From assembly GCA_964252035.1 (NCBI GenBank), contig CAXUOO010000090.1: DNA of 64,000 bases. One strand, given 5' to 3'. Position 1 is the first letter of the stretch; each line of letters starts with the position of its first letter. Below are positions 13,626-59,085 of the stretch, one piece after another. A program made the position numbers and the translations under genes. This stretch comes from Podarcis erhardii. Its lineage: Eukaryota. The notes beneath the pieces were generated by a model, which did no database searches, was not told the origin of the DNA, and saw nothing but the letters and a program-made list of their open reading frames with translations.

Positions 13626-14925
13626 CCTGTGAAGCGAACTTAGCACGCGGCAGCAGAAATGAAAAAAAGAAATTAACACGAGAGAAATAGAGGAAGAAAC
13701 AGCCACAGAGAGCAGGCTACAACACAAGGTGTGTTCGCTCTCGTAGGAATGGACGGAGGACGGAGGAACGACGACGACGCAGAGCTTGGGAGAGGAGGAC
13801 CGCAAGCGAAGGAAATGGGGGAAAAAAATAAAGGAAAAAAAAGGTTTTGAACAGACGGTGGAAATGGAGAAAGAGATGGGTAAGCAGGAACGGAAAAGTG
13901 TAGGAAGGAACGTGAAGAAACGAACCCAAAACCACTTGAGGCGAAGAAAAGGCGGGGAAGACGCGGTAGTAGCAGACCACAGAAAGACGGAAAAAAATGA
14001 AAGATAAACGGAAAAGGATGCACACACGGCAGACAAACACACAAAATTTCAATTTGGTAGAGATGCGTGCCAGTTATGTATGTTCTACACGAACATTAAA
14101 AAGGCGCTTAGCAGAAGTGCTGCGTAAACGGATTTCCTGCGACGAGAGCGAAGCGGAAAGAATATACGTAACGTAGCCAGCCCCCGCTTCGACGAAGGAA
14201 AGAAAGCAAATGTCAAGTACATTGAGGCGGAAATGTACCGGAGAGAGAGAAGCGAGCTGCCAACCTCACGATGAAAGCGAGATACTTACACACCCAAATG
14301 GGAAATCAGCCCTGAGAAAATGCAGGATGTAATCGACGACGCAACGCGATAAAATTGTTTCACTAGAGGCGTGATTTAAGGAGGTAGTGCATATTGCGCG
14401 GCGAAAATGACCTGTAATTAATTCAAAGCGCTGAAACAGAAAATTGAACGGAAGAAATCAAAATCAATTGTAGAGCGCAGACGGCAAACAGGTGCAAGTA
14501 CATATGAAAAGTGCTGTCCAAATAAGATTTGTAACACGTGCTCTTTTTTGGCTGGTAAAATGTAAATTGTTACAGAGCGTGTGTAGGATAGTAAGAAACG
14601 TACTAGTGACTAAGCGTGTTGCAGGAAAAAGCACACAATTTCCGGTCAAACTTATTCCTTTCTAATGAAGGCGGAAAACTCTTGATAAGTAGCTATATTG
14701 CATACATTGATTGAAGCCGATTACATAATATACTACGAAAAGAGTAGTCAGGACACATACGTGGACAATGACGAGCTGTGAACTTCAAGAAAACAGACGG
14801 GCGCTTTGTGAAGCTTTCGAGAAGGCGTTTTCTCAATGCAGAGGGCGGAAGACAATACACATGCAAGCTTCAGTCGATGTACGCATGTGCAGTGCATCCA
14901 TACATATTCTCATGAATATATATTT

Positions 14926-21365: not shown

Positions 21366-22484
21366 TGACGAGAACTAGCGGCTGCTTGTGCTGCAGCACT
21401 GGTGAAATCCGTCGCTATGTTTGAAAAGACGGTCACCAATATGATGGTATAGAGCAATTTTTGTGCAGTCTAGTCGTTGTTGCTACTATGCAGTCCCGCT
21501 GTTGGTGCGTTGTTGCCGACTGTGCTGCTGCTGCACCTCCCTGTTGGAAAACTAGGCTCTTTTTTTTGGGTTGCAACTGTCGCGTTGCTGCCACTTTAGC
21601 GCAGCTTGAGTGGAACAGCACCGTCCTTTTACTTTTTTTTGTGCTAAAGAGAAGCAGCAGTTGCTTCCAATTAGAGTCAGTGCTTCACTACATCTTTGCG
21701 GCAACAAGTGCTCAAAGAATTGAGTCGATGTGTTCACCTTCAATACTTATCTCATTTTGTGACGTTTAGAACACATCAGGACAAGTGTCGAGCAGCAGAT
21801 ATGCGACTCACTACGATCGACTCCTCTTCTTACTGAGATCATGATTAGCATTACGTGGGGATCCCCCGACATTCTCCATCAACAGATTTGATGATCAGTA
21901 TTAAGTCACGAATACATGTTTAGGTGTGGAGTTGAGCTGACACTTCCTGACAAGATCACTATCAAGAAAGTACGTTCCTTGATATGTGCTTGAGAAGATG
22001 ATATTTTTTCAGAATAACTATCAGAACCATATCAGAAACTTCACTTCCTGCTTCTGAATGACTGCTGCTTGTCACACTAGTCTCTCATGCCAACAGAACC
22101 AACACCCACACAGAGAAAGCCATTGAAAAACACCGAAAACCCGTCTCCTAATTCCGCAGCACCCTGTACACATGTGTACGTTTTTGTTGAAACGTGCAAA
22201 TGCACATCATCATCACAACTTCCTCGGTTGAACTCGTCACTTCACGCGTGTGTATATACACCCAGCAACTGGAGGAGTCAGTTTTTCGACCAAGACACTC
22301 CTTTCTCGCTCCAACAGGGAAAACGTTTCGGTTTGATTCATGTGAACGAGGAACTATTTTATTGTCCTAAAAAAAACCAACCCAGCAGCGGGTTTTCGAC
22401 GACTAAACACAGAAACATACACACACATCCGCAAAAATGTCCAAACCATCGATGAATTCGTAGTTGCTGTGCAAGTTGGGCGCT

Positions 22485-23875
22485 CTACTGGAAAAATGTC
22501 GTGCCAGTGTGGTGGGGATTGACGGGATTTCCGTACTGGTCAACGTGAACAGCAGCGACACGCGGCCCACCGATAAGACGCATAATCAAGATGAAGCCAC
22601 AATAGAAAGCAATAGAAGAAATGAAAGCAACGAACAACTGCCAGCCCAGAGACAGTCTCTGACTGCCCTGGAAATGCGGAAAGCGCTGGTCCCCATAGTA
22701 GTAGTAGGAAGAGTAGTCGTGACTTCTACCGTAGGAAGATACAGGCTGCTGTGGCTGCTGATGTTGCAAGGCATCATTCGAGGATCTGGGCCGACGCATT
22801 TGCTGCTCCTGCTCCAAGCGTTGCTGTCTAGTGCGGGCCCCGAAGCGCCGTCGCTGCTGGTGAAGAAAGGAGTTCTGTTGCGCATGCAGTTGCGAGCAGA
22901 GACCCAGCTTTGAAACCTCAGAAACTGCCGATTTTTCTGCAGCAGCGGCTTCTCTTGCCAGAAACAAGACAGGCGCTCTCTCAGAACTCCACCACTCGAT
23001 AAAGCTTCGATGATGACAGCAGCGCAAGTGTGTTGGTGTGGTAGCTGGTGGACCCTTTTCTGCCACTGCGTACGGTGCTGTTTTTTCGGAGAAACTGCGA
23101 GCAACAGCGCCAGGTGGAGTAGTGGCGGACGATGAGGCCGTGACAACAGTACTCGAAAGAAGAGCAAGAATAGACAGGGAAGAGCCAAAAACCGAAGGAG
23201 TCGAAGCTGAAGCAGCCAGTGCACGGGAATCAGCAGCAGCAAAAGCAGCTCTGGCAGTGGCAGTCGCTTGGGGCAGAGTCGTCGCTGGATTAAAGTCGGA
23301 GGAAAAAACGGGTGGTGCTGCAGCAGCGAAAGCGCCAGCAGTGCGAGAAAAAGCCAGCGACTTTGGGGGGAGAAAGCCCCACTTGGGAGGAGCGGAGTCG
23401 TCAGGGAAGACGACGCAGAGTCGAGGAAAGAGGCCACTGCATGCGTCGTTGCGAGTGGCTTTTTTGCAGCAGCTGCAGACGCATGCAGTGCAGGCACCAA
23501 CCCCGCGAAGGAGTGGAAAAACTGCGGAGAGGAAAAACACGGAAAACAAAGACTGCCTGAGAAGAGCGGAGTGCTGCAAAAGGCGTGGCGAAGAAAAGGC
23601 TGAGGAAACGACGCGACAAAGAAGGGCTCACCAGTGGAGGCTGCGTTGCGAGACATGTCAACTGCGGGAGGAGAGGAAAAAACAGCTGCTTTAGCACGAC
23701 AAGTTGCAGCACGTGCATGCACAGAAGCACTAGCAACAACTGCACGACCCCTCGCAAGCACCGCTGAAGGAGCAGCTGCTACTGCGTCGCCGGTGATGAC
23801 AGAGAAAGAGCAGCTCTTCGCTGCTGCAGCAGCCAGCAGCTCGGAACCAGTACCGCGCGCTACGAGAGGCAGCAT
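22485..23875 (-). CDS. Hypothetical protein (~426-463 aa), Ala/Ser-rich N-terminus resembling a mitochondrial presequence, one C-proximal transmembrane helix
   Basis: Two overlapping long minus-strand ORFs. Start MLPLVARGTGSELLAAAAAK at ATG 23875. C-terminal frame ends ...QRLSLGWQLFVAFISSIAFYCGFILIMRLIGGPRVAAVHVDQYGNPVNPHHTGTTFFQ*. The two frames join either through an intron 23631-23522 (G|GTGAGC ... TTCCTCTCCGCAG, phase-compatible) or through a 1-nt shift near G6 at 23365-23370. Targeting and function are inference. Confidence 0.65.
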
Positions 23876-24806
23876 TTTCACGAAAACGGACGGATACACG
23901 CACCCGACATTCATATCTCTCGAGTTATACAGAAATTCATACGCTCATCATATACAGAGAGGTGTTTCTGCGTCGCTAGAATTGTATGTGCAAAAATGTA
24001 CATTCAAACAGTGCACGTGCGGACCTTCTCCTGCTGCTGTCCTCAGGAGCATACAGAGAAACATAGGTTTGTCAATCTCTGGTTTCTACCCTTCGTCTGA
24101 CGTTGCTCAGGCGTGTCGGCTCTTGCAATTGTACATATATATATTCTCCAATACACTCACATCATTCGTCAGATCCAGCAGCCTTCAAGTCTACACATTA
24201 CTCTTCACTCCATTACAAATATATACGTATGTATAGGTTGTGCTGCACGAGTGCAACTTCGAGAACAACTTCACACAACGAAAGCAAATATGTCACGCAG
24301 GAACTGAATGTCGACCTTCTCATCAAGGGCCGCTGAAAAGAAGTTCGTTTTTTTATGGATTCTGATTCAAACAAGTCGCTAGTTTATCGAATTCTAGTGG
24401 AAGAGTCTGGAATGTATTTCAAAGCACGTGTGCAGGTTGTTATAAACACATATATGTATCTACATATGCATACAAGCTGGAATCGAGCAGAATTAGTTGG
24501 AGTGATATGGGAATGGCAGATGCGACGAATATATAAGTGAGTAGATGAAAACATAGTGGTTTCACCTGTTGTGCCTACCTAGACTGACATGGTGCATTAG
24601 CAAGCTCACCAGGTTTCGCAGAGTTTAACGGATGGAGACACGCCAGTTATTGTAAACACATTCACAAAATTCTTTGCCGGGAAAGTACGATATAGCTAAA
24701 TTACATACATATACGTACACGAGTATACTGTCGACAGACATAATCGTATACATATATAATAAATATATTTATATAGTTATGTAGATAGTGTTCCACTATT
24801 GTAATA

Positions 24807-43556: not shown

Positions 43557-46500
43557 TCATGAAAGTGTTTTGGGGACAAATTCCAAGTCTTCAATGGCTG
43601 CACCGTCTGCGGCCATGCAGCCTGCAAACTGTTCTAAAGCAGAAGCGTGCATTTGCTGAATATACAAGTTTGAAAAGCAAACAGAAAAGCTAGCTCGTTT
43701 CAGTAGGATACAGGGGGTTTTTTCACCGTATGCTGCTGACGAAATTGGGAAGTAGTGTATGTGGCATTTTCGGACGGAGTTGCACATTCACTAAGGGCTA
43801 GAGTACACCGCCCGGCTTGTAGATGAAATCAAGACTGTGGCGTACATCATGAGTCGTAAGCTCATTTGCAGACAGCACAAGCAGCGAAGCAAAGCTGTGT
43901 GATGAATAGGGATTATTTAAAGTACCAGTGATCATGGAACTCTGTGACGCGTACCTTTATTGTTTGTATCTCTTTTTTTATTTCCGCTGTCACAGCATCC
44001 TGTGCATGGATTAGAGCGTCAACTTTTTGAGAAAGTCCCGAAAGGTGCTCGGTTTCAGGGCGCTCCTGAATTTTCAGTTCTTCGATCTAACACCAATACG
44101 CATAGCAATCATGGGAGTTATTTTTTGCTGCCATCGTTCAATCCGCCTTGAAGAAAAAATGTAGAGGTCCAGTATGTTGACAACTCGACAGCTGCATAAT
44201 AAGTTCTAATAAACGGTTTATGTACCACCGCAAAACTTCTCAGCGTCTGCAATCGATAGTGGGCCGTCGTAAATACGAATACCCGTAACATTCTGTCCGC
44301 GTAATGTAGGGAGTGCGATTTCGTGGATAATGTCTTCTTCGATTTAATAAGAGTGTGCAGCACACCTCGCATCATTTTGCCGGTCCGATTTGCTTACTTG
44401 TGCAATAGCAACAGCCTCAGCGTCCTGCAGGGCCTCAATTTTTTTTTCGAGAATTAAAGCCTGTCAGAATATTATGAAAAAGTACATTTGAGAGGTGACT
44501 TCAGAGTCAAATTCGAAAAGCGAGTTTAGAACCTATATACCTCTGCATTCTATGTCGTCTACCAGATTTTTTGCAAGGTGCATGGAATCTGAGGCACAAT
44601 TGAAGGTTGAAGGCCACACAGTGAAGCCCGCAAGCCATTGAATGTGCAACCCTATCATCTCGTCGCTTGCATTTCTCGTCTTCCAAGCTTGAAACAAAGT
44701 CGATTTTGACAAACTTTTCAGTTTTTTTTTTTGTCTTAGTCAGTAACCGGCGTTGAGAAAGTAGGGGCAATTTTCGTACCTTCAAACTGGCTTTCTGCTG
44801 AAGATCGTAGACTGCAGTTTGGTATCGGTGCTGCAGCTCGTTTTTATTCTTTTGAAGTATTGCTGTTTGCTGCTTAAGTATTTCTGCTTGGTGCTCGATT
44901 CGCTGTAAGGTTGCAGTCTGCTCAATCAGCTTTTGCTTCGCCTCCGCCAATCTCATTTTTTCTCCCTCGTAAAGTTGGAGCTCTTCTTGAAAATTGTCAG
45001 TTTCCTGTGTAGTCTGCTTGAGAGGTTCTATGGGTATGGTAACAATAGAGTCGCAACAAATTTTGTTCCAAGGCGCGCTTGAGATAGTACGCTAACGGGA
45101 GAAATCAAGATTGAACATCACCGAACTGTGACGTCACCTTCAGTATGTAGAGGTCCACTGCAAAGTAGCTCAACACTAAAATATCGGGGATTGATGCCGT
45201 GTCCAGAAGGCGTTGCTTCATGATTGAATCTATATGTGACGGCCCAAAACCGGGTCCGAAATTTTTTCTAAGGCTGATTTGTATCCAAATCGGCGTGTTT
45301 TCGCAGATCGTTTCGTTCGTGCATGACTAACTAACTAACCACAGACGGACACTCACCGACAAGTCCTTTGTTTTTTGCTGTCAGCTCTGCCAGCCTCTTC
45401 TCTTCACGAACCTCCTCCAGTTTTAAGGCAGCGTGTTCACTCTAAAAGAGTTAAGAGGAATTTCACAAGGTTAAGCTTGTGTGCCAGTAGTTTGAGGTAC
45501 CCCAGACACGTCAGCGTACCAATTTGTGTTCTAATCAGCGTACACTGTCGCGTACCTTCAAGCATTTAATAAGCTCAAGGTTAGAGGTCGCTATGTCGCC
45601 ATAATAACGTTTGATCGCTTGCGCTCTTTTTGTGTTCTGAGACTGCACCATGCTGAAGCGCACAAATTACTCATGCGTCGTCTGCACCTCAACGTCAACA
45701 CAGGGCAGCTCAAATGTCTAAAAGAAGATCTCACCACATTTTACTATTTATGCATGTGCCACTGTTCCTAGAATGGAAAAGAGGTTCCTTTCCGGGCCGA
45801 ATATGCGGTTTGTGCAGTCGACTTGCGCGTTTATTGAGGAGTATGGGGTGCTCGCCAACTTTAAAACGATCAACAAAAGAAAAGGGGTTTTTTTCTACGT
45901 ATGCTATTTCCTGCAGGAGCATGACAGTCCCTGACAAAGGCCTCCACGCGTCGAGTGATTCCACGTTGTTATTTGTCGGCTTACAGAACGTGATTATTTT
46001 TGCTTTCTTCGAGATTTGCAATTACTTGTGTACGTCGTTTCTGCATGTCTTCTCTGAGCTGGAAGGACGTGACCACATAGCAGCAGCCGGCTCAATTTTT
46101 ACCAAAGCACCGTGATTGCACTTCAGCTGCATTTCCGGATGTTGCGCTGATCCTTACACCGCGGCTAGCAATTATCTACGTTCATCCACATCAATATACT
46201 TAAAAGAAAGCTTAATGAAGTTTGGTCTGAAAAGTTAGTGCAGTTTTTCGGATTTCAATGAAGCATACATTTTCAAGTCGAAGCTTCCACTTTTGGTGAA
46301 GATCTCGAGCGCTTCTTTGAAACTCGTTGCGTAGCTCAAGAACTCTCTCATCTTGTAAAAGTCCCAGTTGAAGAATGAGCTGTTCATGAGCGATATGCGC
46401 CTCTGTATTTGCAGCCAGCTTACTTCTTTCCACGCTTTTATTGTGTTGTTCCTTCTCTCTGTGCAAGTGGTAGTGTAAAGGCGGATTTGTACATCGTTAT

Positions 46501-47585
46501 GAACGCTCAAGCAGTTTACGCAGCGATATATAGTGGCAGTGGCAGCGCATCACCTTCAGCACTTGAAATTACCTGTGAATGTCTTCACGCAGCTTCAACG
46601 CAGCCTCCGCATTGATCTTCAGTCTCGCGGCTTCTTCTGTTTGCTCCGCTAGCAGCTGCTTAATTCGAAGCTTGCAAAGTCTGCGTTGCATTGAGTGACC
46701 TTCTAGCTCGTCTTGGAATTCCTTTTCCTTCTTACGCAACAAATCCTTTTTTGTCTGCATGCTCAAGGTAAATCAAGAGTGCTTGTGTCCCATTTTGTTG
46801 GGGCATATACCCTCGTATCAGCGGAGGGGACGCGCGCAGCTAAATGTTTTGTCAAAAAAAACAGATCGTGCTAACTTTTTTTTAAGCTCATTCTTGAAGG
46901 ATGCGACAAATCCAGCCCCTTTATTATCCTATAAAATATATCAATTTTGCGTCCAAACATTGTGACCCGTCGACCGCTACAGCAGACTACCTCCAGGTGC
47001 GGTGTCAAATGCAGCTTACAAACGCACCGATTCCAACACTTACAATCGGCAGAATGCTTTACTGACCTCAGCAGCATTCTGCTCCAGTGTTCGTAAATTT
47101 TGAATTTGCTCTTTTTCGGCCTCTAAATCCTTGCGAAGCTTTTCTTCTGCTTCGCACTTTGATTTCAGAGACCTGATCTGCAGGTTCGAGTAATCAAAGC
47201 AACAAAAAAAATAGTACATCAACCGTTTGAACTGCGAACTTTGGGAGAAACAGCAACGCTGCACAGTTTGCTGCGACACGACTAAGTTGTGATAAAAAAC
47301 AACACTATATTTCTTATTTTATTTTTTTATGACACGTTAATTAATTTTCTCCTTAGTTGTGTTTCTTTCCCAATACTGAGGACCCATCAGGGTGGCAGAG
47401 CAGAGTCCACAAATCAGATATGTTAGAAGGCCGTTGAGCAGGTGATATGCTCGCTATTATACCTCTTCCAAAAGTCGTTTTTTTTCCACTTCTTCATCGA
47501 ATTCCGGGGATGAAGCTTCCGCTCCAGAACCCTTCTTCCGAGAAGTTGCTTCCGAAATGCCTGCCTTTTTTCTCTTGGGCGGCAT
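43557..47585 (-). CDS. GAS8: Growth arrest-specific 8 / dynein regulatory complex subunit 4 (DRC4, trypanin family), 467 aa, 11 exons
   Basis: Exons 47585-47463, 47177-47067, 46754-46573, 46458-46269, 46058-45985, 45652-45556, 45441-45357, 45027-44780, 44460-44398, 44086-43955, 43655-43557. All GT-AG, phases consistent, 1404 nt. Colinear with GAS8: MPPKRKK start; IKRYYGDIATSNLELIKCLK (cf. [20 protein letters not shown]); VYDLQQKASLKALILEKKIEAL (cf. IQEVQQKTGFKNLVLERKLQAL); C-terminal AAIEDLEFVP (cf. IPLDNVGFKP). Confidence 0.92.
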
Positions 47586-49312
47586 TGGTGCAATGCTTGC
47601 TCAAAGGCAGCTCAATATATCTTCGAAAGCTGACCTTTCTGTTCTGGGCGGCCTTCTTTATACCCTGAACTTCTTCATTTACAGTTGATCAATGGTAGCA
47701 GTAAAAGCTAGTCGAGCTTAGTAAGGTTTTTGAATTCTCTACCCACTCTTGCTTTTATCTGTGGAAGAAGTAGTGACTTTATAGGATATAATAGAAATGG
47801 CTCAGTAGATTAGGAAAAAGAAGTGTTTTTTTATGATTTTCCAGTTGTTCAAGCAGCTATGGCAAGCAGAATTACAGGCAACTAGAACTGCCCGTTAACG
47901 GAAAACTACTGAGAATATATAGGCCAGTTGCATATTTTCAATTTGGGAATGCTTTCAATGCATTTGAGCTCCTGGAAATGTTCAGTTAACAGCATCGAAT
48001 TAAGTCCCTGAACCACTACACTGATTGTGGGAATTGCTGTATACAGAATTCGTGGATGGAGATGGCGAAACCTTGCTGTGCGATCTGTCTGCTGATGGCT
48101 AGAGCTTTATAAAATAGCTTCTGCTTTGCACATACTATATAACCATGCCTAGGTTCAAATTAGTCGTGAGGAAAGGTCTGAACGGACTTGGCTTAACCTA
48201 TGTCATCTTGTGTCGAAAGGTTGTAGACCACGAAGTGACTCTCTACACGTTTTTATGTTTCTATAGTTCTTCACGGAATATCTCCTCAATTTGAAAATGT
48301 GCAGCAGTTAATTTGGCGTATGGTCGTATACTCATACTGAGATCTGAAGGACATTATTTTCTTGGTCTGCACGTGTATAGTTACGAGCGCCATGCATACT
48401 AAAATTAGCCAGTTTTGCTTTGAGTTTCTACTTTGCAGCCAACTTCCTTCAGAAGGCTTCAAATCCCGCCGCTACGGTGTCGGGGCCCCGCAGGTCCAGT
48501 CAAACATAAGTTATGTACGGCATTTTATATGGACCAGCTCTTGCAAATTTCGGTTAGAAAGCTTGAAATAAAAGCTTTCATATGGCGCACACTGCAGCTG
48601 TCAAAACTGTTACAAAACGAACCATTCATCGACTGTGCACTGCACCTACAAAAGATTTGACTTTCATGACAGGTAGTGCCGGCGCATGGCGTCTAATTTT
48701 AAAAATTAGCAGTGGCTTTAACGGTGAGCCTTGCGTCCGTTTGATAATGTCATGTAAGTAGTTCTTCTAATATAACTAATCTTTTTCGAATGTCAATATT
48801 TTGGGGTTTTTCTAGCTTATCATTGGTATTGACGGCACTCTGCTGCTGACTGGTAGTGCCAGCAGTTATGCGTTTCTTAAAAAGCAAGTCCCACATACCT
48901 TGGGAAAACATCCGATAGTGCACACGGATGTAGCGAGCAGAAGTCTGCAATTATATACAAAGAATCGCTCACCGTACGCACCGGAAAAACCAGAGAATGC
49001 CAAACAGCATGCAGCCACTCCATTTGTAATGCCAAAGTTAGCCGCCCAGGATTTAGGTACCGAAAAAAAGCTAAAATAGCGGACCGCCCTTACAAATAAT
49101 GTGCTTCTTTCGCTTTCGGTTTATTTATTGGTTCTATCAAAACGACACAGTACTTCTAGCTAGTGACACCGGTCTTTCATTGAAAAGAGGAGCTTGTCTT
49201 TCACTGTAACGACTAAAACTGAGCCATCGTACAAGGAGAAGTTAAACATATATTTATATATATATACATATACTTATTTATATATAAATATACATATATT
49301 GCCTCCAAGGCG

Positions 49313-50011
49313 ATGGAGAGAGTAGGGCCGCAGCCGGCTGGCGAAAATGAAGTATTCAATGATAAGGATGCCAACTGTCCGTATGAAGGTTTATTCAAGG
49401 GATTCGGCCTGAGCGGCAAACCAGACCCACCACTATCGCACACGATGGTACGGGTGAATCCGCAGCACAACAAATCCACGTTGTTTTTCGGCGAAGAAAA
49501 GTCACCTCGAGAACGATTCGAGTTTGCTGAACAACAGCGCCATCAAAAGCCCTTTGAACCTTCATTTTACATTGAGCAAGCAGCTGCCGCAAATAAGCAT
49601 GTTGACAGGAACAAGAGTAGTATAGTAATGGGAGATGACGGACCACCTTTTGTGTACCCGGAGCATAAGGAGCATCTGTGGACGGCACAGACAACGGTAG
49701 ATCCGCACCATGCGCGACACACTCATAATCAACACAACAAATCATCGCTGGTGTTTGGGGATGCCACCGATTCAGAGCGCTATGCGTATGCCCAAGAACG
49801 TCGGGGTCAGGGGACTTTTGGCCAGAGAGGGCAAGAAGAGTTGCTGTTTGCAGCAGTTGCAGAGAAGGAGAAACAAATGGTCAACAGAAACAGAAGAAAC
49901 GACTCAACTTTCGTCTTTGGCACAGAAGTAGCTGACGTGCCTTCGGGGACACTGAAAAACTACTCCACACAATGCAGTAAGAAGGCCGATAGCACCGTCA
50001 TTTACCTTTGA
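49313..50011 (+). CDS. Uncharacterised 232 aa protein with four N[KD]S[ST]xxxG repeats; C-terminus may instead be spliced to end at 50116
   Basis: Clean ORF with ATG and no repeat artefact. Motifs NKSTLFFG, NKSSIVMG, NKSSLVFG, NDSTFVFG at aa 53, 100, 142 and 196. Internal repetition supports a real protein. Confidence 0.8.
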   Translation: MERVGPQPAGENEVFNDKDANCPYEGLFKGFGLSGKPDPPLSHTMVRVNPQHNKSTLFFGEEKSPRERFEFAEQQRHQKPFEPSFYIEQAAAANKHVDRNKSSIVMGDDGPPFVYPEHKEHLWTAQTTVDPHHARHTHNQHNKSSLVFGDATDSERYAYAQERRGQGTFGQRGQEELLFAAVAEKEKQMVNRNRRNDSTFVFGTEVADVPSGTLKNYSTQCSKKADSTVIYL

Positions 50012-51741
50012 GTTTCCAGATGTAGTGAAGACTTAGCTGACGTACCACCGGTACCACAAGGCGCAGCGCTCTCATGGCCAGCCTCCCTCGAACGTTGCAT
50101 GAGTCGAAGTTGGTGATTCAGTGCATAGTGCTGAACTGTGTAAATCACAGTGGTTAAATATCTTTTATGTAATGTAAGCTGATTGAAAGAATATGATGAG
50201 CTGCAGACGGTATAGTCAAGCGTAAATACGTGCCTCTTTTAACGTGAGGTCACCTTTCACACGAGCTCATCCTCATTTCTAAATGTAGCTGTTTGTTAAA
50301 TAATGTATGTACATGATTCCACTTGCCTTGGCAAATGCAAGTGAAGACGCTTCACCTCTTCTTAAAGTAGACAAATGATCAAGCAGCTTTCCACTCTTCT
50401 GTCGCTTCAAATTTCCAGCTTCAACATTTGTATTAGCTGCATATTGCTCAATCTAGGTTTATTTGGTATATATTTTCATGATACCAAATTCTTCAAGGTT
50501 CATGTAACCCTTTATACACATATGGATATGACGCTTCCCGTTACCCCCGTCCTACAGGATTTGACTGTCGTTTTCAGAATTTTTTTTTTGCAACTGCACT
50601 CGTGTGAAATTACTTCCCGTATCTTATTCGGTGCTTAAGAGCCCAGTAGTATCTATAACTAGTTGTAGTTCAAGATGTCGACGAGATGCATCTAACTTTA
50701 TCATTTCGCAGATCTGCGGACGTCAAAACAAGGTGGAGTTTAAAGAAGCAGGAGTAGGTACGGGAGATATTTTATTTTTTGACAGGTGTTAGCCTCTCAC
50801 AGAACTTCCAGCGGAATTGACATTTGAGTTTTCTAGGAAACTGGTAAGTTCTCGTGTACAGTTATTATCAAGTCAATTGCTGATGCCTTTTCGCATTTTT
50901 CGCATCTCAGGTCTGTCGACTCCTACTTTTTCCACCTTTTCAATGCAGAATTGAACGAACAACTCAGCATCTACCTGTAAAACTTGAGAACAAAGGTGGG
51001 AAACGATATCTGTGGATTTTTGTTTACGTCCAATCATTATAGGGCAAATATTTCTGTATTTCCTGCACGCTGCGCCAATCATTTTTATCAATTTGTCTCA
51101 ACACCCACCTAGGTATGGACAATCAGACAATTGTGCAACCCAGATATTGTGCACTTTTGTTTTGTGAGTTCCACATTATAAGTGCAACTATTGAAAGGTT
51201 TTAATTGCAACTTCAATATCGCATTAACATCGGTAGCTTTAAAAGAAGCTATCAGTACCTCGATTGACACATGAGCCCTCCCTGCCGTCTACGTCTCCAT
51301 CAACTTCATGGATCCCGTAATCTCTATATAACACAGTACACAATTTTGCGCTCAACTGATGCGCGACAAAGAATTCTATGAGTAAACAAAGCAGCTAAAG
51401 CTATTCTGATATAAATGTATGCGATCGCTCTGTTTATTCGTTTTTTCGCTGAATTCTCGCTGTTTTTATAATGTAGGATATCTCCGAGCATCTGTGAAAG
51501 CGGGAACAGCTTACGCAAACATTGTCCGCGTGCAATAGTTATACCTACTGTGTACAAAAGTACGTCTTCTACGTACATACGCATAATCAAGTCTCTTCAA
51601 AGCAAACAGATGTAACATATTCAACATCGTGTACATACTGGGCAGTTCGTTTGTGAATACGTGAAATTTGGCTGGAAACTTTTATTAAAATATACTGAGG
51701 AAAAGAACGCGTTCAAAAATTTGCAAATATGAGTGTAGCCG

Positions 51742-53521
51742 CTATTCTTCATCATCGTCCATCCGCTGCTTATCCGAATCATCATCGTAGAAAAAGTACT
51801 CGTCAATGCCTGTAGAAGACGCAAAATGGTAAGCTTCGCAAATGTGAGAGAAATCTAAAATAAAATTACAATAGGTATGGCTGAAGATGATATCAATTTT
51901 AGAAATCACAAGCAGCTTTGGTAAAAAATACTAAAAACGCTCAGAAACTACCCTTTCGGACCTCGAGAAGTTCATACTATATATGATACAACTATATCTT
52001 TAAACCTCTATATCTTTCGATAATAACGCACAGTCATCAACTTCGCGAAGCCAAATTTGCAGCAGCTGCAACAGGTAGCACTTCCCTCACAAGTATGAAG
52101 CAGAAGCACCGAAGCAAATTTATGCACGTTAATTTTTCCTAAATGCCAATTAAACCCGTAGCAGACAGATAGAGCACAAAAAATAGCATTTCAACTTCCT
52201 ACAAGTAGAAGAATTCTGCAAGCTCTTGCGTCGAACCTGTACATGCATATGCCTTTAAATGATTATAATGAAAAACACGACGTATACCCACTTAGTAGGT
52301 GAACGTGAAAGGTGTTTGAAGTCATCATATATACACCTTCGTAATAATTATTCACTGGTACGCATCAAGAAAGGAGCTCGCAAAGCAATAATTATTGTTT
52401 ACTACGGGCAGTGCTAGCCTGAAACCCGCATCATATAAGAATAAGATGGCGTGATTCTCTGAAATATATTGGCAAAGAGGGAAGACACCCGAAGAAATGT
52501 GCAGCTATAGCATAAAGACTGCCATACAGAGAAAATCGCCTCGTAATCGAGAAAGGAAAAAAATTCAGCAGCGATGATGACCATCCACCTTTTAGCTAAT
52601 TTCAACTGCCAACATATACGATGAAACAAATAACCTCAAAAAACGAGACCGACCCGCGGAGTTGCCAGAAAAAATTATATAACATAAATGGAGACAGCCT
52701 TTCATACACGGCGCTGAGTAAGCAAGGCTTGAGCACTGATATGATTCAGCGTCTATGACACTGAAGCCGGAACGTGACTCAGTCTGAATGCTCGACTGTC
52801 CACAAGAACATCTGCCCGGTAGATCATTTAAAAATACGTGTACAGCAATCTACTGCAAAGTTTCTTGGCGCAGCGGTCGCAACAGGTGGCAAGCAAAATT
52901 CAGAGAGGAGATAGACATTGTAACATCTCTCCCTTACCCGCAAGCTGACTGACTCCGCTTTCATTATCCGCTTTCCTCGCAGAATCACCATCTACTATAC
53001 CTGTAGCAGCAGAGGGAGAGAGGCTGGCTACATTGACAAAGTGTATGCCCTTTTTATTGAAAGCAAGCAGCAAGCCGAAAAATGTATCTATGCCGATGGA
53101 AATACTTCGTCTTTCTTTTAAATTTGTTTCCTCCAGTACGCTCAAACAGTATTCACGAAAAGGGGTGGATGTAGGAATTTCTTCATTTAAAGAGCACCAT
53201 GTTTTGTAGTTACTCTCCAGCATTGAGATCACAGAGCTCCGACGGAAAAGTGCATGCAAAGTGCGATTTTTTCGCCCGAAGCAAATGCGCATGAGGCCAT
53301 CCCACTCTTTGAAATCCAGCTGAAAAAAGAGACAGGATCGTCGTGCTAATCCCATAATGCATTTGCTAATCAAATGAGTCTGAATTATACCAATATTTAA
53401 CATACATATTTATATTGTACATACTAGCATCCGAAAACAGAACCTTATGTACTCCTATTGGACATATAGTGTTCAACAACAGACATATACATGTGTATGC
53501 AAATACGCATAAAATATATAT

Positions 53522-53568
<47 letters not shown>

Positions 53569-53747
53569 CATGCGTACAAAACTTCCTTTTGCGTCCGTCA
53601 ACGCAAACAGATACAAAACTTTGTGTATTAAACATTCTGGTCTTGACCAATACGAAAAGTAAAAGTATAAACGCAATAGCACGCTTGAAAATAAAAAGGC
53701 GCGTGCTACAAACAATTCTAAAAGAACATTCACTTACTCGACGTATG

Positions 53748-53791
<44 letters not shown>

Positions 53792-53991
53792 ACTACTAAA
53801 TGCAAATATGCACCAACGTGTCCATATCCCCATTATGTCCGAATTTGGCTGTACGTGCGGTGGTAGGTGATTAGTTAAACGAAGAATGAGAAAAGAACGA
53901 GAGAGATTTCAAAGACTAGTTGACTAAATTACGTGAATAGTAAATGGAGAAAGACACCAATGCGCGTATACACATGTGCGTGGATAGTTGA

Positions 53992-54028
<37 letters not shown>

Positions 54029-56096
54029 AGTCACATGAAAACAATATTCCTTTATGCCGCGTACGACAAATTACTGCAAGTAAATGCACGCAAACTTGAT
54101 TCGTTCTTAGCAACTTGCTGCAGGAAGAGCTCGATATGTATGCACGTAAGTAATTTTTAGAAAAGCCAGCTTCAATGTTTACCCCACCTGCAGAAGTACC
54201 TTTGCAAGAAGACTGAATTACCTGGAAAAGCTTAGGGCGAGGCACAATTTTCACTACTACAGAGTCGACTTTAGGCGGCGGACTGAAGTGCTTAGCTTCC
54301 ACTTTACACACCCGTTGCACGGTGCAGAAAAGGCTAACGTTGACAGCTAATCGACAGTAGTTCTTATCTCCAGGTTGCGCCATTAGCCTCTCTCCAAACT
54401 CCTTTTGAAACATCAACACTGCGCAACTGAAAAAGCACCCACATACGCAAGCAAGGATCTCAGAAACGTGTGCTCAGTTTTTGTCTGAACAGTTTTTTGA
54501 AAGTCATTCCACAAATAATTACTTACAAATCTATAAAAGCAGCACCATGCCACTGCAGTGAACGTGTAAGGCTCTAGATCGGATATATTTTTTCCACCGA
54601 ATTTGAAACTGCGAATACGGATAGACTGACACCGACTGTCTACACTCCCTAATACATTTACTTAAAATTTAAATATATATATATATATAATATACGAAAG
54701 ATCATAGTGTGCCTAAAAGCCGGAATTATATCTGCACAAGCAGGCTTTCTACAAAACTGCTGCTTTGAACAAGGCATGGTGAACTGAGTGGACATGAATA
54801 TTGCCACCTTGAAAGGTAGAATTACCCATTTAAAGGACAAAAGTATCATCCCCAAAGAAGCTGCGACATATATATAAATGGAGAATTGTCTTGCCTACGT
54901 GTGGGAGTGAAAGGAGCGACAGCCAGCGTTTTTGCTGCTGGCAGTAAACATGCATAGCCCTATGTATGCAAGTGAAAATCACACCTCGCAGGCGTAACCG
55001 CACGCGTATGTTTCAACAAAGGTGTTGGAGAGCGAAACAGTTCGTACAAGCATAAAATAAATGGAATTCTACTTCTTTGCAATCACTTGTGAACCAACAC
55101 TTACGTGTAGATAAACAACCCGCGCGCAACTGGTTTGTTCACTGGTGCTGCGGGGTATAATTTGCATTGCTGTGCCCATACACAGGTACTTATACAGTAA
55201 CTCAAAAACTCGGCTATACAGTAGCATACACTTGATAATATATATGCAAACACAGAGCTATATATAAGTATATATATATATACATTGGTACGGTTACGAA
55301 TCCAGACGATATACCGCTAGTAAGTCAATGTAACGCTTGAGAAATTGAATAACGCAGATATACTGCTGTAGACGTGAAATCTATCGACGGATTACATGCT
55401 ATAAACGGATACGTCTCTTGTACACATTCACGTAGAATTGAAACGCTTATATATACATACTTATACACATACACATACAGAGACGTAATGAAAACGAGTG
55501 GTCATAACCCCTGCGCACCTTCACGTTGCACCCCCTCGAATAGGGATGCACTTCAGTTTTTTCTGAAGTAAAGAAAGCCTCTTTTTATCAAGGCATTAAT
55601 CATCCCACTCCCTTTTTCGACGCATTTATCAGTAATATGCACCAGCTAAAAGCAACGCTCTGCCGCGGCAAGCATGCGGACAGTGTAATGCTATTTCATG
55701 TGACATAGAATGCATAGGTCGCGGGCAAAGATGCAAGAGGGAAAGAAACCGAGGGAAAGAGTGCATAACGGCTTTATTCCCAGCATAAGATGTGCGAGAG
55801 AACTAATCCCAATTTACGTATAGGGCATGCATACAAGCGCAAGACATTCTTCAACCAACGCCGGTGTCACATGTACTCAGGGTTACGGTAGTCCTTTAAA
55901 TGGCAAAGAGAGACTTGCGGAAGAATTGATTAATGCGACAGCCAACTGGCAAAAAGACATTTCCACGGTATACCATAAACGCGATAAAACTATTAATACG
56001 GGTCATAAAGCTCAAACCTAGCCTTTCCTACGCTCAACACACGCGCTTCATGGTGTTTCTGTCCGCCTGCTTCTAGACAAGTAGTTCTACATACAG

Positions 56097-56145
<49 letters not shown>

Positions 56146-56189
56146 CTCTTGCCGTGTACTCTTTCTATCGGAATACGTTTTGACTTGTA

Positions 56190-56242
<53 letters not shown>

Positions 56243-56842
56243 TTATATGCGTAGCTCTGTTGGTATTGACATATATGTAAACGGGTATGTACTCCCGGTG
56301 TGTGGACCACCTTCAAACAATACATATAAGATTTTTAGTCCATTAGTCACCGCAGCATAGCAAACTTGAAAAAGAATACAAGAAAAGATTCTTTCATTGA
56401 AAATGCTAGTGATGTACGAATCTGGCATTATGCAAACAGAACTTTCACAACCGCCGCGGCATAAGAGGAAAGAAAAAAGCGTTTCATCAAAGTCATGCAA
56501 TTATTGCTAAGCGTTTTTCAATTCAATAAAATGGAAGGAATATACGTCTAAGCTTTTTAACAAGCGGGGGATACGTACATGTACGCAGAAGTCCGAGATA
56601 ATTTTTGAACGAGGCAAATCGCATGAGAATCGCAAAAATGAGCAGCGGACACACACGCGGACTTTCCTCTATAGAGATGTACAAATGAATAAACGGAGGC
56701 ACTCACAGATCTCCTACTCATGTCTTGTGTGCAACTGCGACTAGATACTGGTTTCCGTAAATTAGAAAAGTCTTTTCTTTCCGTACATTGCTTGAAACTC
56801 GTCAAACGCCAGGTATTCAAGCATTAGCGATCGTATATGTAG

Positions 56843-56875
<33 letters not shown>

Positions 56876-59085
56876 TATCTTAAAAAATACGTGACCAGAC
56901 AGAAAAAACTTGTATGATTCTACATAAATCCGTGCACTGATAGCGCGCGTTTTAAAGAGGCAGACGCATAATGATTGTGTAGTTGAGAACCGCTTGATAA
57001 GTAGACGGCACAGGTACGTAAATAAATGCATCTTCGCAGCAGCCTCAGCAGCACCATCAGCTCCGGCAACAACATCAACAGCCACAACAGCAACAGCATC
57101 AATAGCAACCGCAGAACCAATAGTATATGCGCCAGCACTTGGATCGATACACGACTGCAGCAGCATACACCGCTGCCGTAGTAGAAGCTTCAGCACAGCC
57201 ACAGCAACTCCAGCATGTTCCCCAACAAGAAAGGAACCGCTTTTCTGGCATAAGAAGACGATTTGTACATGTGTAAAGAGTCCAAGTGAAGCATCCCAGG
57301 GGGCGTAGCGGAAAGAAAATCAGTTGAAACAAGTAGACAAAATGAGAGGTCCACGTTATCAACAGCCGACCTGTCATTTGAAAATTGAGTAGAAGGTCAA
57401 ACTCGATGACAACTAAGGATACCTCCTCGCCAACATTGATATACTCGTCTTTCTGTGTAATTCGAGGCACTGTAAGATCCTAACATGTATCAAAGCTCTG
57501 TCCACCACTACCACTTGAGAGATATGCAGACCACATCAGACGATTCAGCCAAGCAGCATGAGTTGTACCAGCATCTGCAGAAAGTAAAACAGCACCAGAT
57601 TATGGACAAAAAAACTAGCTGCCCCCACTCGTGCTTATCGATGACACCAGAAAAAAAAACTATGCCAAGTTTTTACTACGTACGACGCATGCACATGTGT
57701 AGACGTCACTGTTCTTCTTCCTGACTAACCGAAAAGGGGGACGATGTGCCAGGAGCCGCAAAAGAAAATGAGAAGAAATCTGATATGGAAGGTTAGCAGC
57801 ACAAACGTCAAAAACGCCCAAAGGCGCTCGCAAGGCATCGCCGTGCCGAACTGTCAGATTGAAAAAGCCATTACTTAAAGCGCGCTTCTTTACTTCACTG
57901 ACCATACGCTCATCAACATCCAACGCAACTACTTCCCTAACCAGCGGCAGCAACCGCATTGTCAAGTTGCCCGTTCCTGTGCAACATAACAACAGCAGAG
58001 TAACTGCCATTAGCAATAAAAGGGAGCATGCGCAGCAGCAGCAGCTACATGCTGAGTTACACAAGTAGCAGCAGATGGAAAGGAAAAACCATTCGAACGC
58101 AGCATAGACAACAGCAGCAACCGGAGCTTTCGTGTTCCCCAAGTTTGAGACAACCACTCGCAGCAGTAGTAGCATGAACGGCTAGCATACCCAGAGGGCA
58201 ACAACTACACAATGCACCATTGAGTATCAATACACGCTTGTTTGCTTTCCTTTTTCAAGCATGCACACGCCTAGACAGACAACTCACTCTTACATATGGC
58301 GATATACACATATATATATATATGCATATGTATATATTTGTCTATTTAGACTGAAGTTTGCTTGTGGAAACTGCTTTAGATATCAAGCTTTGTGGAGACT
58401 TGTAATGTGAGGTCGTTCTAATGGTCTCTGGTTGGTTGAAATAACGTTTTGTGGTTGACACGATCTCCCGCTGATCAGAACTCGAACACGGCAGCAATCT
58501 CGCACGCAATACACACGTACTTATAGATATAGTTATGTATCTGTAAGTGGATCGAAGAGAGCTGAATGAAGAAAATCACACAGGTAAAAGGGTTCTAAGT
58601 AGTGTTATGCATGTCGTTTGAACTGTATCATAAGTGCTCCGCGCATTATTTTATGTATACACAATTAGGCACATCTATCAATAGAGAGAGAGTGAGAAAC
58701 GATATACAAGATTAAAATATGTATATGAGGGTGAAAGCAGAAGAGAAATTCAGTCCAAACTAGCATTTGTTAATTCGCAGTATTGCGCTTTACCCGGTCC
58801 TATTTCCAGCACGGTATCTGAACTTCGCAAATCTGCGGCTCTGATCATTTTTTCCAGAACAGCTGGATTCTTCAGAAGATGCTGACCAAACTTTTTATGC
58901 AGAGCCAAGCCTGACGTCAGGAGCGGCTGCGCATGCAGTTTGCTACTGCTGCTGCTGTTTCTTTTGCATACCGCTGGTATTGGTGCTGCTGGTGCTGCAA
59001 ACTCTGAAAGACGTTTGTAGGGCGCACTGTAGGGCCCACTGCGAATTGCAGCAGATTTTTTCGTAGAAAAGCCTCGCCACGCCAT
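51742..59085 (-). CDS. DIM1: 18S rRNA adenine dimethyltransferase (DIM1/KsgA family), ~397 aa, 5 exons; 387 aa ending at 52900 if the last intron is not used
   Basis: Exons 59085-58794, 57976-57730, 54426-54222, 53319-52938, 51809-51742. Motifs: [23 protein letters not shown] (SAM binding), [66 protein letters not shown]. All junctions are GT-AG and in phase. Confidence 0.95.
56195..56241. repeat. (AT)n microsatellite in DIM1 intron 2
   Basis: Seen directly. Confidence 0.95.

What the first reader, a model, noticed from the sequence alone, without database searches (positions are those of the whole stretch)
49313..50011. Uncharacterised repeat protein with N[KD]S[ST]-hydrophobic-x-FG/MG motifs, head-to-head with GAS8: candidate microgamete microtubule-binding protein
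Seen: four motifs spaced 47, 42 and 54 aa apart, arranged as two ~90 aa super-repeats (NPQHNKSTLFFGEEKSPRERFEFAEQQRHQKPF versus NQHNKSSLVFGDATDSERYAYAQERRGQGTF; ANKHVDRNKSSIVMGDD versus KQMVNRNRRNDSTFVFGTE). It has no signal peptide or TM segment, and the N-terminus carries PYEG and GFG. Established: short S-S-hydrophobic-x-(F/L)G motifs occur in the microtubule-binding Jupiter/JPT1 and SPIRAL1 proteins, and many axonemal inner proteins are small disordered repeat proteins. Inference: given its position next to DRC4, this may be an undescribed axonemal or microtubule-lattice protein of the flagellated microgamete. I do not recognise it as a named gene.
Basis: partly seen in the sequence, partly recalled or inferred. 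Interest (0 to 1): 0.7.

Follow-up and report, generated by a model that had tools for sequence, protein, structure and literature searches.

The report
Orphan four-motif disordered coccidian protein
This is a real gene for a small, floppy protein with four copies of a short conserved motif; it occurs only in Toxoplasma-like parasites and is the counterpart of the unstudied Toxoplasma gene TGME49_248210, which is silent in culture stages and switched on in cat-gut stages, but nothing yet shows that it binds microtubules or belongs to the sperm-like microgamete.

Summary
Window 49313-50011 (+) is an intact 232-aa ORF with no signal peptide or TM segment. It is built from two ~60-aa homologous units and carries four copies of [HRK]-N-x-S-[ST]-hydrophobic-x-hydrophobic-G at the stated spacing (47, 42, 54 aa).

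It is the orthologue of Toxoplasma TGME49_248210, also found in Hammondia, Neospora, Besnoitia BESB_005200 and two unnamed Logan assemblies. All are unnamed 'hypothetical' proteins. The gene order GAS-domain gene (-) / this gene (+) / RrnaAD methyltransferase (-) is the same in every lineage checked.

An exhaustive HMM search of 1.84 billion proteins found no other relatives. Pfam (including JUPITER) and PDB give nothing. AlphaFold predicts disorder (pLDDT 48). Toxoplasma versus Besnoitia gives dN/dS 0.13.

Published Toxoplasma data show 0 FPKM in untreated tachyzoite cultures and at most a trace under alkaline (bradyzoite) induction, and at least 8-fold more transcript in a cat-derived merozoite preparation that lacked flagellar transcripts. 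The GAS neighbour (TGME49_248225) rises towards the gamete stages.

The motif shares only K-S-S-hydrophobic-x-F with JPT2. It lacks the PPGG/GGG turn that is functionally critical in JPT2 and SPIRAL1.

Verdict: a conserved, stage-restricted, multivalent disordered protein. The microtubule or microgamete role is plausible but untested.

The parts
49313..50011 (+). Single-exon CDS (232 aa plus stop); orthologue of Toxoplasma TGME49_248210 and Besnoitia BESB_005200
   Evidence: dN/dS is 0.13 for Toxoplasma versus Besnoitia; dS is saturated for the window pairs.
49370..49408 (+). Conserved N-terminal box ANCPYEGLFKGFG (A, N, P, Y, G, F, K, G invariant in 7 orthologues)
49466..49492 (+). Motif 1, HNKSTLFFG
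49607..49633 (+). Motif 2, RNKSSIVMG
49733..49759 (+). Motif 3, HNKSSLVFG
49895..49921 (+). Motif 4, RNDSTFVFG, preceded by the basic run NRNRR
49463..49633 (+). Super-repeat 1 (motif, two predicted short helices, basic stretch, motif)
   Evidence: internal alignment E 4e-8; helices 65-76 and 83-92
49730..49921 (+). Super-repeat 2, the duplicate of super-repeat 1
   Evidence: (helices 153-163 and 172-183)
49247..49300 (.). TA-rich low-complexity tract directly upstream of the start codon
43557..47192 (-). Divergently oriented GAS-domain gene (the detected exons only; the first exon was not located); syntenic counterpart of TGME49_248225
   Evidence: Compared exon by exon by tblastx; the exons were not joined.
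52997..58917 (-). Downstream RrnaAD-type methyltransferase gene (detected exons); the same neighbour as in Toxoplasma, Besnoitia and locus L001
39999..42137 (-). Leucine-rich-repeat protein exon beyond the GAS gene; the same position as in Toxoplasma and Besnoitia

Best explanation
The ORF encodes a 26-kDa cytosolic, intrinsically disordered protein. It is the orthologue of the uncharacterised Toxoplasma gene TGME49_248210, in a family confined to Toxoplasma-like (tissue-cyst-forming) coccidia. The protein arose by duplication of a unit made of a motif, two short helices, a basic stretch and a second motif. It therefore presents four equivalent short linear motifs, [HRK]-N-x-S-[ST]-hydrophobic-x-hydrophobic-G followed by acidic residues, about 42-54 residues apart, plus an N-terminal PYEGLFKGFG box. 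These points are shown: the gene, the conservation, purifying selection concentrated on the motifs, the predicted disorder, and stage-restricted transcription of the Toxoplasma orthologue (0 FPKM in untreated tachyzoite cultures and at most a trace under alkaline bradyzoite induction, present in cat-gut stages). The mechanism is inferred. It most likely works as a multivalent docking protein: each motif adds a short strand-like segment to one copy of a repeating partner, so the four motifs clamp a periodic or oligomeric structure in the definitive-host (pre-sexual and sexual) stages. A basic or His residue at -3 from the invariant Ser would allow control by basophilic kinases. The partner is unknown. 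The microtubule lattice is the leading single candidate (about 0.25-0.3), but it is not demonstrated.
For: The gene and its relatives: (61-40% identity to seven orthologues). Synteny GAS(-)/gene(+)/RrnaAD(-) holds in the window, Toxoplasma, Besnoitia and L001. Selection: dN/dS 0.13 for Toxoplasma versus Besnoitia, and dN 0.33 with saturated dS for window versus P0001; DNA conservation between the window and L002 stops at the CDS ends. Motifs: 4 observed against about 1e-5 expected, with N, S and G invariant in 24 of 24 aligned copies. Internal duplication: E 4e-8. Disorder: mean pLDDT 47.8, with only four short helices. No TM segment or signal peptide. Expression of the Toxoplasma orthologue: listed among genes at least 8-fold higher in cat-derived merozoites than in tachyzoites, log2 -3.2. 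It has 0 FPKM in all eight untreated pH 7.4 samples and in seven of eight untreated pH 8.2 samples (0.3 in one), and at most 0.66 FPKM after AP2XI-2 or AP2XII-1 depletion. It is absent from the held hyperLOPIT tachyzoite proteome supplements.
Against: No partner has been identified, and no structure or interaction prediction could be run. Multivalent docking is a generic reading of a repeat-motif disordered protein. The expression evidence is indirect: it comes from another species, and the fold change is close to the study's threshold. The Sci Rep tables that would give per-stage values were cut in storage. The invariant N-x-S could serve another purpose, for example a turn, or a sequon if the protein were secreted unconventionally. 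The window copy and P0001 lack the conserved C-terminal tail of the other orthologues, so part of the family's function may be missing or different here.
Confidence: 0.5

Rival explanations
1. One reading: a microgamete axonemal or microtubule-lattice (possibly luminal) protein, working like Jupiter/JPT or SPIRAL1. Each of the four motifs would bind one tubulin subunit along a protofilament, and the gene would be co-regulated with the adjacent GAS8-like gene through a shared divergent promoter.
For: Like JPT2, it has four imperfect motifs in a small disordered protein. JPT2's microtubule-targeting C-terminus is printed as LNPPGGKSSISFY, which shares K-S-S-hydrophobic-x-F with the motif here. 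The divergent pairing with a GAS-domain gene, 1.2-2 kb apart, is conserved in four lineages. That neighbour in Toxoplasma (TGME49_248225) rises through the enteric stages and is listed as a microgamete candidate. The orthologue is silent in tachyzoites and essentially silent under bradyzoite induction. Its small fold change in the cat-gut preparation is compatible with a minor gametocyte fraction, which the authors did not exclude.
Against: There is no Pfam JUPITER match in any orthologue, even at E up to 10. No PPGG, PGG or GGG occurs anywhere in the protein, yet these are the residues whose deletion or mutation abolishes microtubule localisation of JPT2 and plus-end tracking of SPR1. No PDB chain matches, and the PDB includes deposited microtubule-inner-protein structures. 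The family was not found in Eimeria, Plasmodium or any other flagellate lineage among 1.84 billion representatives. TGME49_248210 passed the 8-fold threshold in a merozoite preparation said to lack flagellar transcripts, while no neighbouring 2481xx or 2482xx gene did. Depletion of AP2XI-2 or AP2XII-1 induced only trace levels. Synteny is not specific evidence, because the unrelated RrnaAD neighbour is conserved just as well. No 8-mer is shared by the four intergenic regions.
Confidence: 0.25
2. A hydrophilin or LEA-like protective disordered protein, made late in the definitive-host stages and carried into the oocyst, that acts without a specific partner.
For: It is very hydrophilic (GRAVY -0.97), has 6.9% Gly, is predicted disordered, has no TM segment, and is silent in tachyzoites. 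That Toxoplasma oocysts express LEA-type proteins is established knowledge recalled from memory; it was not checked here.
Against: No LEA or other Pfam family matches. The strict invariance of three motif residues in 24 of 24 copies, and the fixed motif positions, point to specific recognition, not to bulk physicochemical action. No oocyst expression data were obtained.
Confidence: 0.1
3. An FxFG-type, nucleoporin-like ligand for transport receptors (the fourth window motif reads F-V-F-G).
For: S-[ST]-hydrophobic-x-F-G followed by charged spacers resembles FxFG repeats (a resemblance from memory). The window protein has five FG dipeptides.
Against: The residue before G is F in only 13 of 24 motif copies, and L, M or I otherwise. 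The invariant residues are N, S and G, not F. There are only four copies, and there is no nucleoporin Pfam hit.
Confidence: 0.03
4. Not a functional gene: a chance ORF or a decaying pseudogene.
For: The window copy and P0001 lack the C-terminal tail found in the other orthologues. No transcript evidence could be obtained for this organism.
Against: The reading frame is intact in seven lineages, with conserved start, length and motif positions. dN/dS is 0.13. Conservation is confined to the CDS. The truncated C-terminus is shared by two diverged species, so it is a lineage trait and not fresh decay.
Confidence: 0.02

Closest known systems
TGME49_248210 / HHA_248210 / Neospora CBZ55994 / Besnoitia BESB_005200 (annotated 'hypothetical protein')
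   Same: It is an orthologue: 40-51% identity over the whole length, the same start, the same four motif positions and N-terminal box, a single exon, and the same flanking genes.
   Different: The window protein (like its closest relative P0001) is about 20 aa shorter. It lacks the conserved C-terminal tail ending YGNFDQSE, and no hidden exon encoding it was found. No member of the family has a described function, and no paper in the searched library mentions the gene in its main text.
Jupiter / JPT1 / JPT2 microtubule-associated proteins (Pfam JUPITER)
   Same: Both are small, disordered proteins with four imperfect short repeats. The segment K-S-S-hydrophobic-x-F of JPT2's microtubule-targeting C-terminus resembles N-K-S-S-L-V-F-G here.
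   Different: The JPT motif is defined as PPGGK*S, and the glycine turn is the functional element. The coccidian motif has [HRK]-N in its place, and the protein has no PPGG, PGG or GGG at all. There is no Pfam JUPITER match. The resemblance is analogy at most.
SPIRAL1 (plant plus-end tracking protein)
   Same: A short S-S-L...F-G-G-D segment follows the N-terminal glycines (my translation of the primer printed in the paper), which is the same flavour of motif.
   Different: The GGG triplet is what SPR1 activity requires, and it is absent here. Four residues separate SS from FG in SPR1, against two here. SPR1 carries one motif at each end, not four internal ones, and it is plant-specific.
Microtubule inner proteins with short periodic repeats (for example Toxoplasma SPM1, recalled from memory)
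   Same: The concept only: a disordered protein whose repeat period could match the tubulin lattice.
   Different: No sequence similarity to any PDB chain by single sequence, family profile or motif profile. In addition, the Toxoplasma orthologue is not expressed in tachyzoites, where those proteins act.

Membership tests
TGME49_248210 orthologous group (Toxoplasma-like coccidia) | Full-length significant similarity with a conserved start and length | tested here: met
   E 7e-76 to 1e-36 with a single sequence; 2e-124 to 3e-92 with the profile. Alignment.
TGME49_248210 orthologous group (Toxoplasma-like coccidia) | Conserved position between the GAS-domain gene and the RrnaAD methyltransferase gene | tested here: met
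TGME49_248210 orthologous group (Toxoplasma-like coccidia) | Four [HRK]-N-x-S-[ST]-hydrophobic-x-hydrophobic-G motifs plus the N-terminal PY[DE]G.FKG box | tested here: met
TGME49_248210 orthologous group (Toxoplasma-like coccidia) | C-terminal tail KEFG...YGNFDQSE | tested here: not met
   Absent from the window ORF and from P0001. No exon was found within 3.5 kb downstream. This is a lineage difference, not grounds for exclusion.
Jupiter/JPT (Pfam JUPITER) | Match to the family HMM | tested here: not met
   No JUPITER hit at E up to 10 for any of the seven orthologues
Jupiter/JPT (Pfam JUPITER) | Repeated PPGG(K)xS motif required for microtubule localisation | tested here: not met
   The definition comes from PMC12773733. 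The window protein contains no PPGG or PGG.
Jupiter/JPT (Pfam JUPITER) | Four imperfect repeats in a small disordered protein | tested here: met
Jupiter/JPT (Pfam JUPITER) | Direct microtubule binding | not testable with these tools
   Needs co-sedimentation, TIRF or localisation experiments
SPIRAL1 | [quoted passage not shown] | tested here: not met
   The definition comes from bioRxiv 10.1101/521047. The protein has no GGG or PGG.
Pfam DUF7360 (PF24059) | Score above the curated cut-off (27.6 bits) | tested here: not met
   17.6 and 16.7 bits, in only 2 of 7 orthologues, covering the first motif only. Treated as chance.
FxFG nucleoporin repeats | Invariant Phe in the FG core, in many copies | tested here: not met
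   F precedes G in 13 of 24 motif copies; there are only four copies
Solved microtubule inner or associated proteins (PDB) | Detectable sequence similarity to any solved chain | tested here: not met
   0 hits with the sequence and with the family profile. The motif profile hit only antibody J-regions, at E about 0.8.
Hydrophilin/LEA-like | High hydrophilicity, Gly above 6%, and LEA repeats | tested here: inconclusive
   GRAVY is -0.97 and Gly is 6.9%, but there is no LEA Pfam match. The criteria were recalled from memory.

The most novel reading that the evidence does not exclude
The motif [HRK]-N-x-S-[ST]-hydrophobic-x-hydrophobic-G is a new tubulin-binding short linear motif, convergent on the K-S-S-hydrophobic-x-F part of Jupiter/JPT but without the glycine turn. 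On this reading, the protein is a lineage-specific microtubule (possibly luminal or axonemal) protein of the sexual stages of tissue-cyst coccidia, paired with a GAS8-like gene since the family's origin.
Probability: 0.2. Interest if true: 0.6.

Novelty: new member of a known kind. Interest (0 to 1): 0.33.

Why it matters
The definitive-host (pre-sexual and sexual) stages of Toxoplasma-like parasites are the least accessible part of their life cycle. Most genes specific to those stages are unnamed 'hypotheticals'. This work ties an anonymous ORF in a lizard-associated coccidian to TGME49_248210. It shows that the family is narrow, under purifying selection and silent in tachyzoites, and it defines a precise four-copy motif that can be mutated. 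That makes one concrete question testable: what does the motif bind, and is it tubulin? If it does bind tubulin, it would add a new microtubule-binding motif and a lineage-specific component of coccidian gamete or merozoite cytoskeletons. If it does not, it is one more stage-specific disordered protein of modest interest.

Tried and rejected
(1) Pfam DUF7360. The hit is weak (17.6 bits against a cut-off of 27.6), occurs in 2 of 7 orthologues and covers one motif, so I rejected it as chance. No paper mentions the family.

(2) P0004. This was the only extra hit of the exhaustive search (E 3e-9). It is a translated tandem satellite with a recurring KHCSSALVFGD, not a homologue.

(3) A hidden C-terminal exon. 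A regex scan, tblastn/tblastx and an HMM of the tail against six-frame translations of window 49801-53500 and of L002 all found nothing.

(4) PDB searches with the sequence, the family profile and a 22-column motif profile. Only antibody J-segments appeared, at E about 0.8.

(5) A shared cis-element in the GAS/ORF intergenic region. No 8-mer is common to the four lineages, and the 7-mers are at shuffle level.

(6) Literature. No main-text mention of TGME49_248210, TGGT1_248210 or BESB_005200. There was no occurrence in the held supplements of the hyperLOPIT atlas or the Nature 2023 pre-sexual-stage paper. The single-cell sexual atlas has no supplements held. The Sci Rep 2019 per-gene tables were cut when stored, so absence there means nothing.

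There is no transcript evidence for this organism.

(8) A fold search was not run. The model has no residue at pLDDT 70 or above, so any match would be meaningless.

(9) An LC8-type (TQT) or PP1 RVxF reading of the motif was considered from memory and dropped, because the anchor residues do not fit.

(10) The exons of the GAS and RrnaAD genes were compared one by one (tblastx).

Full report
**Observation**

Window 49313-50011 (+) is an uninterrupted 232-codon ORF.
- The motifs NKSTLFFG, NKSSIVMG, NKSSLVFG and NDSTFVFG begin at residues 53, 100, 142 and 196, giving spacings of 47, 42 and 54 aa.
- The N-terminal box reads ANCPYEGLFKGFG.
- There is no hydrophobic segment: the maximum 19-residue Kyte-Doolittle window is 0.19, GRAVY is -0.97, the pI is 6.4 and the mass is 26 kDa.

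The motif recurrence is not chance. Of 200,000 shuffles of the protein, only two contained even one match, against four observed. The two halves align with each other at E 4e-8, so the protein arose by internal duplication of a unit made of a motif, two short helices, a basic stretch and a second motif.

**What it is**

A word-based search, followed by a profile search, of the 5.8-billion-protein collection found the following relatives:
- Besnoitia BESB_005200 (51% identity);
- a Neospora 'conserved hypothetical protein' (50%);
- Hammondia HHA_248210 and Toxoplasma TGME49_248210 / TGGT1_248210 (about 46%; 253 aa);
- two unnamed Logan assemblies, P0001 (61%) and P0003 (44%).

An exhaustive HMM search of 1.84 billion cluster representatives added only P0004. 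That hit is a translated tandem satellite and not a relative. The family is therefore confined, as far as annotation shows, to Toxoplasma-like coccidia. Earlier notes of this scan describe this genome as a coccidian co-assembled with a wall lizard, and the orthologue pattern agrees with that.

In all seven proteins the start, the N-terminal box and the four motifs occupy the same alignment columns. Over the 24 motif copies aligned, from six of the seven proteins, the consensus is [HRK]-N-[K>E,D]-S-[T/S]-[L/V/I]-x-[F/L/M/I]-G-[D/E/T]-[D/E/A]. N, S and G are invariant in 24 of 24 copies.

**Evidence that it is a real gene**
- Toxoplasma versus Besnoitia gives dN 0.24, dS 1.9 and dN/dS 0.13.
- Window versus P0001 gives dN 0.33 with saturated dS.
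- DNA similarity between the window and the P0001 contig is limited to the coding region.
- The Toxoplasma, Besnoitia and P0003 genes are single exons.

One real difference exists. The window protein and P0001 end about 20-25 residues after motif 4. They lack the roughly 40-residue tail ending YGNFDQSE that the other five orthologues share. I found no downstream exon encoding that tail.

**Neighbourhood**

I compared the Toxoplasma locus with the window exon by exon, by tblastx. The order in the window is:
- LRR protein (-), about 40.2-41.3 kb;
- GAS-domain gene (-), exons at 43557-47192;
- this ORF (+);
- RrnaAD-type methyltransferase (-), 52997-58917.

The same order holds in Toxoplasma and Besnoitia, and the GAS/ORF/RrnaAD part holds on the P0003 contig. 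The Toxoplasma GAS neighbour is TGME49_248225, 'PF2 arrest specific protein 8/11'. Its published coordinates, chrXII:3747903-3751855, match the locus exactly.

The head-to-head arrangement is therefore real and old. However, the unrelated RrnaAD neighbour is conserved just as well, so synteny alone says little about function. No 8-mer is shared by the four divergent intergenic regions.

**Structure and family tests**

Pfam gives only a sub-threshold DUF7360 match (17.6 bits against a cut-off of 27.6), covering the first motif in two of seven orthologues. JUPITER is not hit at E up to 10. The PDB gives nothing with the sequence or the family profile, and the motif profile finds only antibody J-regions.

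AlphaFold2, run with the seven-sequence alignment, gives a mean pLDDT of 47.8. No residue reaches 70, and there are four short helices: 65-76, 83-92, 153-163 and 172-183. The prediction is disorder. I did not run a fold search on such a model.

**Expression (Toxoplasma orthologue, from papers)**
- Hehl et al. 2015 (PMC4340605), Table S1A, lists TGME49_248210 among the 312 genes at least 8-fold higher in cat-derived merozoites (5 days post infection) than in tachyzoites, at log2 -3.2.
- No other gene with an ID in the 2481xx or 2482xx range is in either list.
- The authors state that flagellar and oocyst-wall transcripts were lacking in that preparation. They also state that a minor gametocyte contribution could not be excluded.
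- In PMC10817966, Supplementary Data 1, the gene has 0 FPKM in all eight untreated pH 7.4 samples and in seven of eight untreated pH 8.2 samples (0.3 in one). It reaches at most 0.66 FPKM after AP2XI-2 or AP2XII-1 depletion.
- It does not occur in the held hyperLOPIT supplements.
- Ramakrishnan et al. 2019 (PMC6365665), Table S5, lists the neighbour TGME49_248225 as a microgamete candidate, with counts rising from 0 in the first columns to 328 in the last. That table was selected by annotation and GO terms, so the absence of a 'hypothetical' gene from it is uninformative. The full per-gene tables were cut in storage.

In sum, the orthologue is silent in tachyzoite culture and essentially silent under bradyzoite induction, and it is transcribed at a low level in cat-gut stages. 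Whether the source is merozoites or early gametocytes is open.

There is therefore no transcript evidence for this organism itself.

**Comparison with the named microtubule proteins**

For JPT2, a 2025 PNAS paper (PMC12773733) reports four imperfect repeats defined as PPGGK*S. Deleting the last three abolishes microtubule localisation, and the C-terminal targeting peptide is printed as LNPPGGKSSISFY. For SPIRAL1, the N-terminal GGG is required for plus-end tracking. The primer printed in that paper translates to ...GGGQSSLDYLFGGD.

The coccidian motif shares the K-S-S-hydrophobic-x-F flavour and the four-repeat, disordered architecture. It has [HRK]-N where those families have the functionally critical glycine turn, and the whole protein contains no PPGG, PGG or GGG. 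It is therefore not a member of either family. At most it might work like them.

An FxFG-nucleoporin reading fails because the Phe is not conserved: F precedes G in only 13 of 24 copies.

**Mechanism**

These points are shown:
- a conserved, selected, disordered protein that presents four equivalent linear motifs about 42-54 residues apart;
- transcription, in Toxoplasma, restricted to definitive-host stages.

The following is inferred. The protein acts as a multivalent docking protein, and each motif engages one copy of a repeating partner. Invariant N, S and G flanking alternating hydrophobic residues suggests a short strand plus a turn. A basic or His residue at -3 from the invariant Ser fits basophilic-kinase sites, so binding could be phospho-regulated.

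I put this general reading at about 0.5. A partner-less hydrophilin role gets about 0.1.

**Novelty and score**

The gene is a new member, in an unannotated lizard-associated coccidian, of an already annotated but wholly uncharacterised orthologous group. The functional claim is untested, and two of its supports have weakened: membership of the JPT/SPIRAL1 motif families, and association with flagella across lineages. Interest is 0.33. If the motif proved to be a new tubulin-binding element (probability about 0.2), interest would be about 0.6.

Noticed in passing
window 43557-47192 (-); L004:4829-8781: [quoted passage not shown] The window's GAS gene is the syntenic counterpart of 248225, so calling it DRC4/GAS8 outright is premature.
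   Followed up: partly
window 49922-50011; alignment A2 columns 215-260: The window protein and its closest relative P0001 lack the conserved ~40-aa C-terminal tail (ending YGNFDQSE) present in Toxoplasma, Hammondia, Neospora, Besnoitia and P0003. No exon encoding it was found downstream.
   Followed up: yes
L003:1-16963 (ENA metagenome contig): P0004 and its neighbours are back-to-back ORFs of about 330 aa called on a tandem satellite. The repeated peptide KHCSSALVFGD mimics the family motif and produced a spurious E 3e-9 profile hit.
   Followed up: partly
window 49247-49300: A TA-rich low-complexity tract (TATA/TACA repeats) lies immediately upstream of the start codon, inside the divergent intergenic region shared with the GAS gene.
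   Followed up: no
window 12001-14000 and 22001-24000: Two 2-kb bins have GC of about 0.52 against a background of about 0.40. They are probably large coding exons of other genes.
   Followed up: no
window 51737-51822: A short block is conserved with both L002 (3059-3144) and L001 (6354-6443) between the ORF and the RrnaAD exons. It may be a small exon of the downstream gene or a conserved non-coding element.
   Followed up: no
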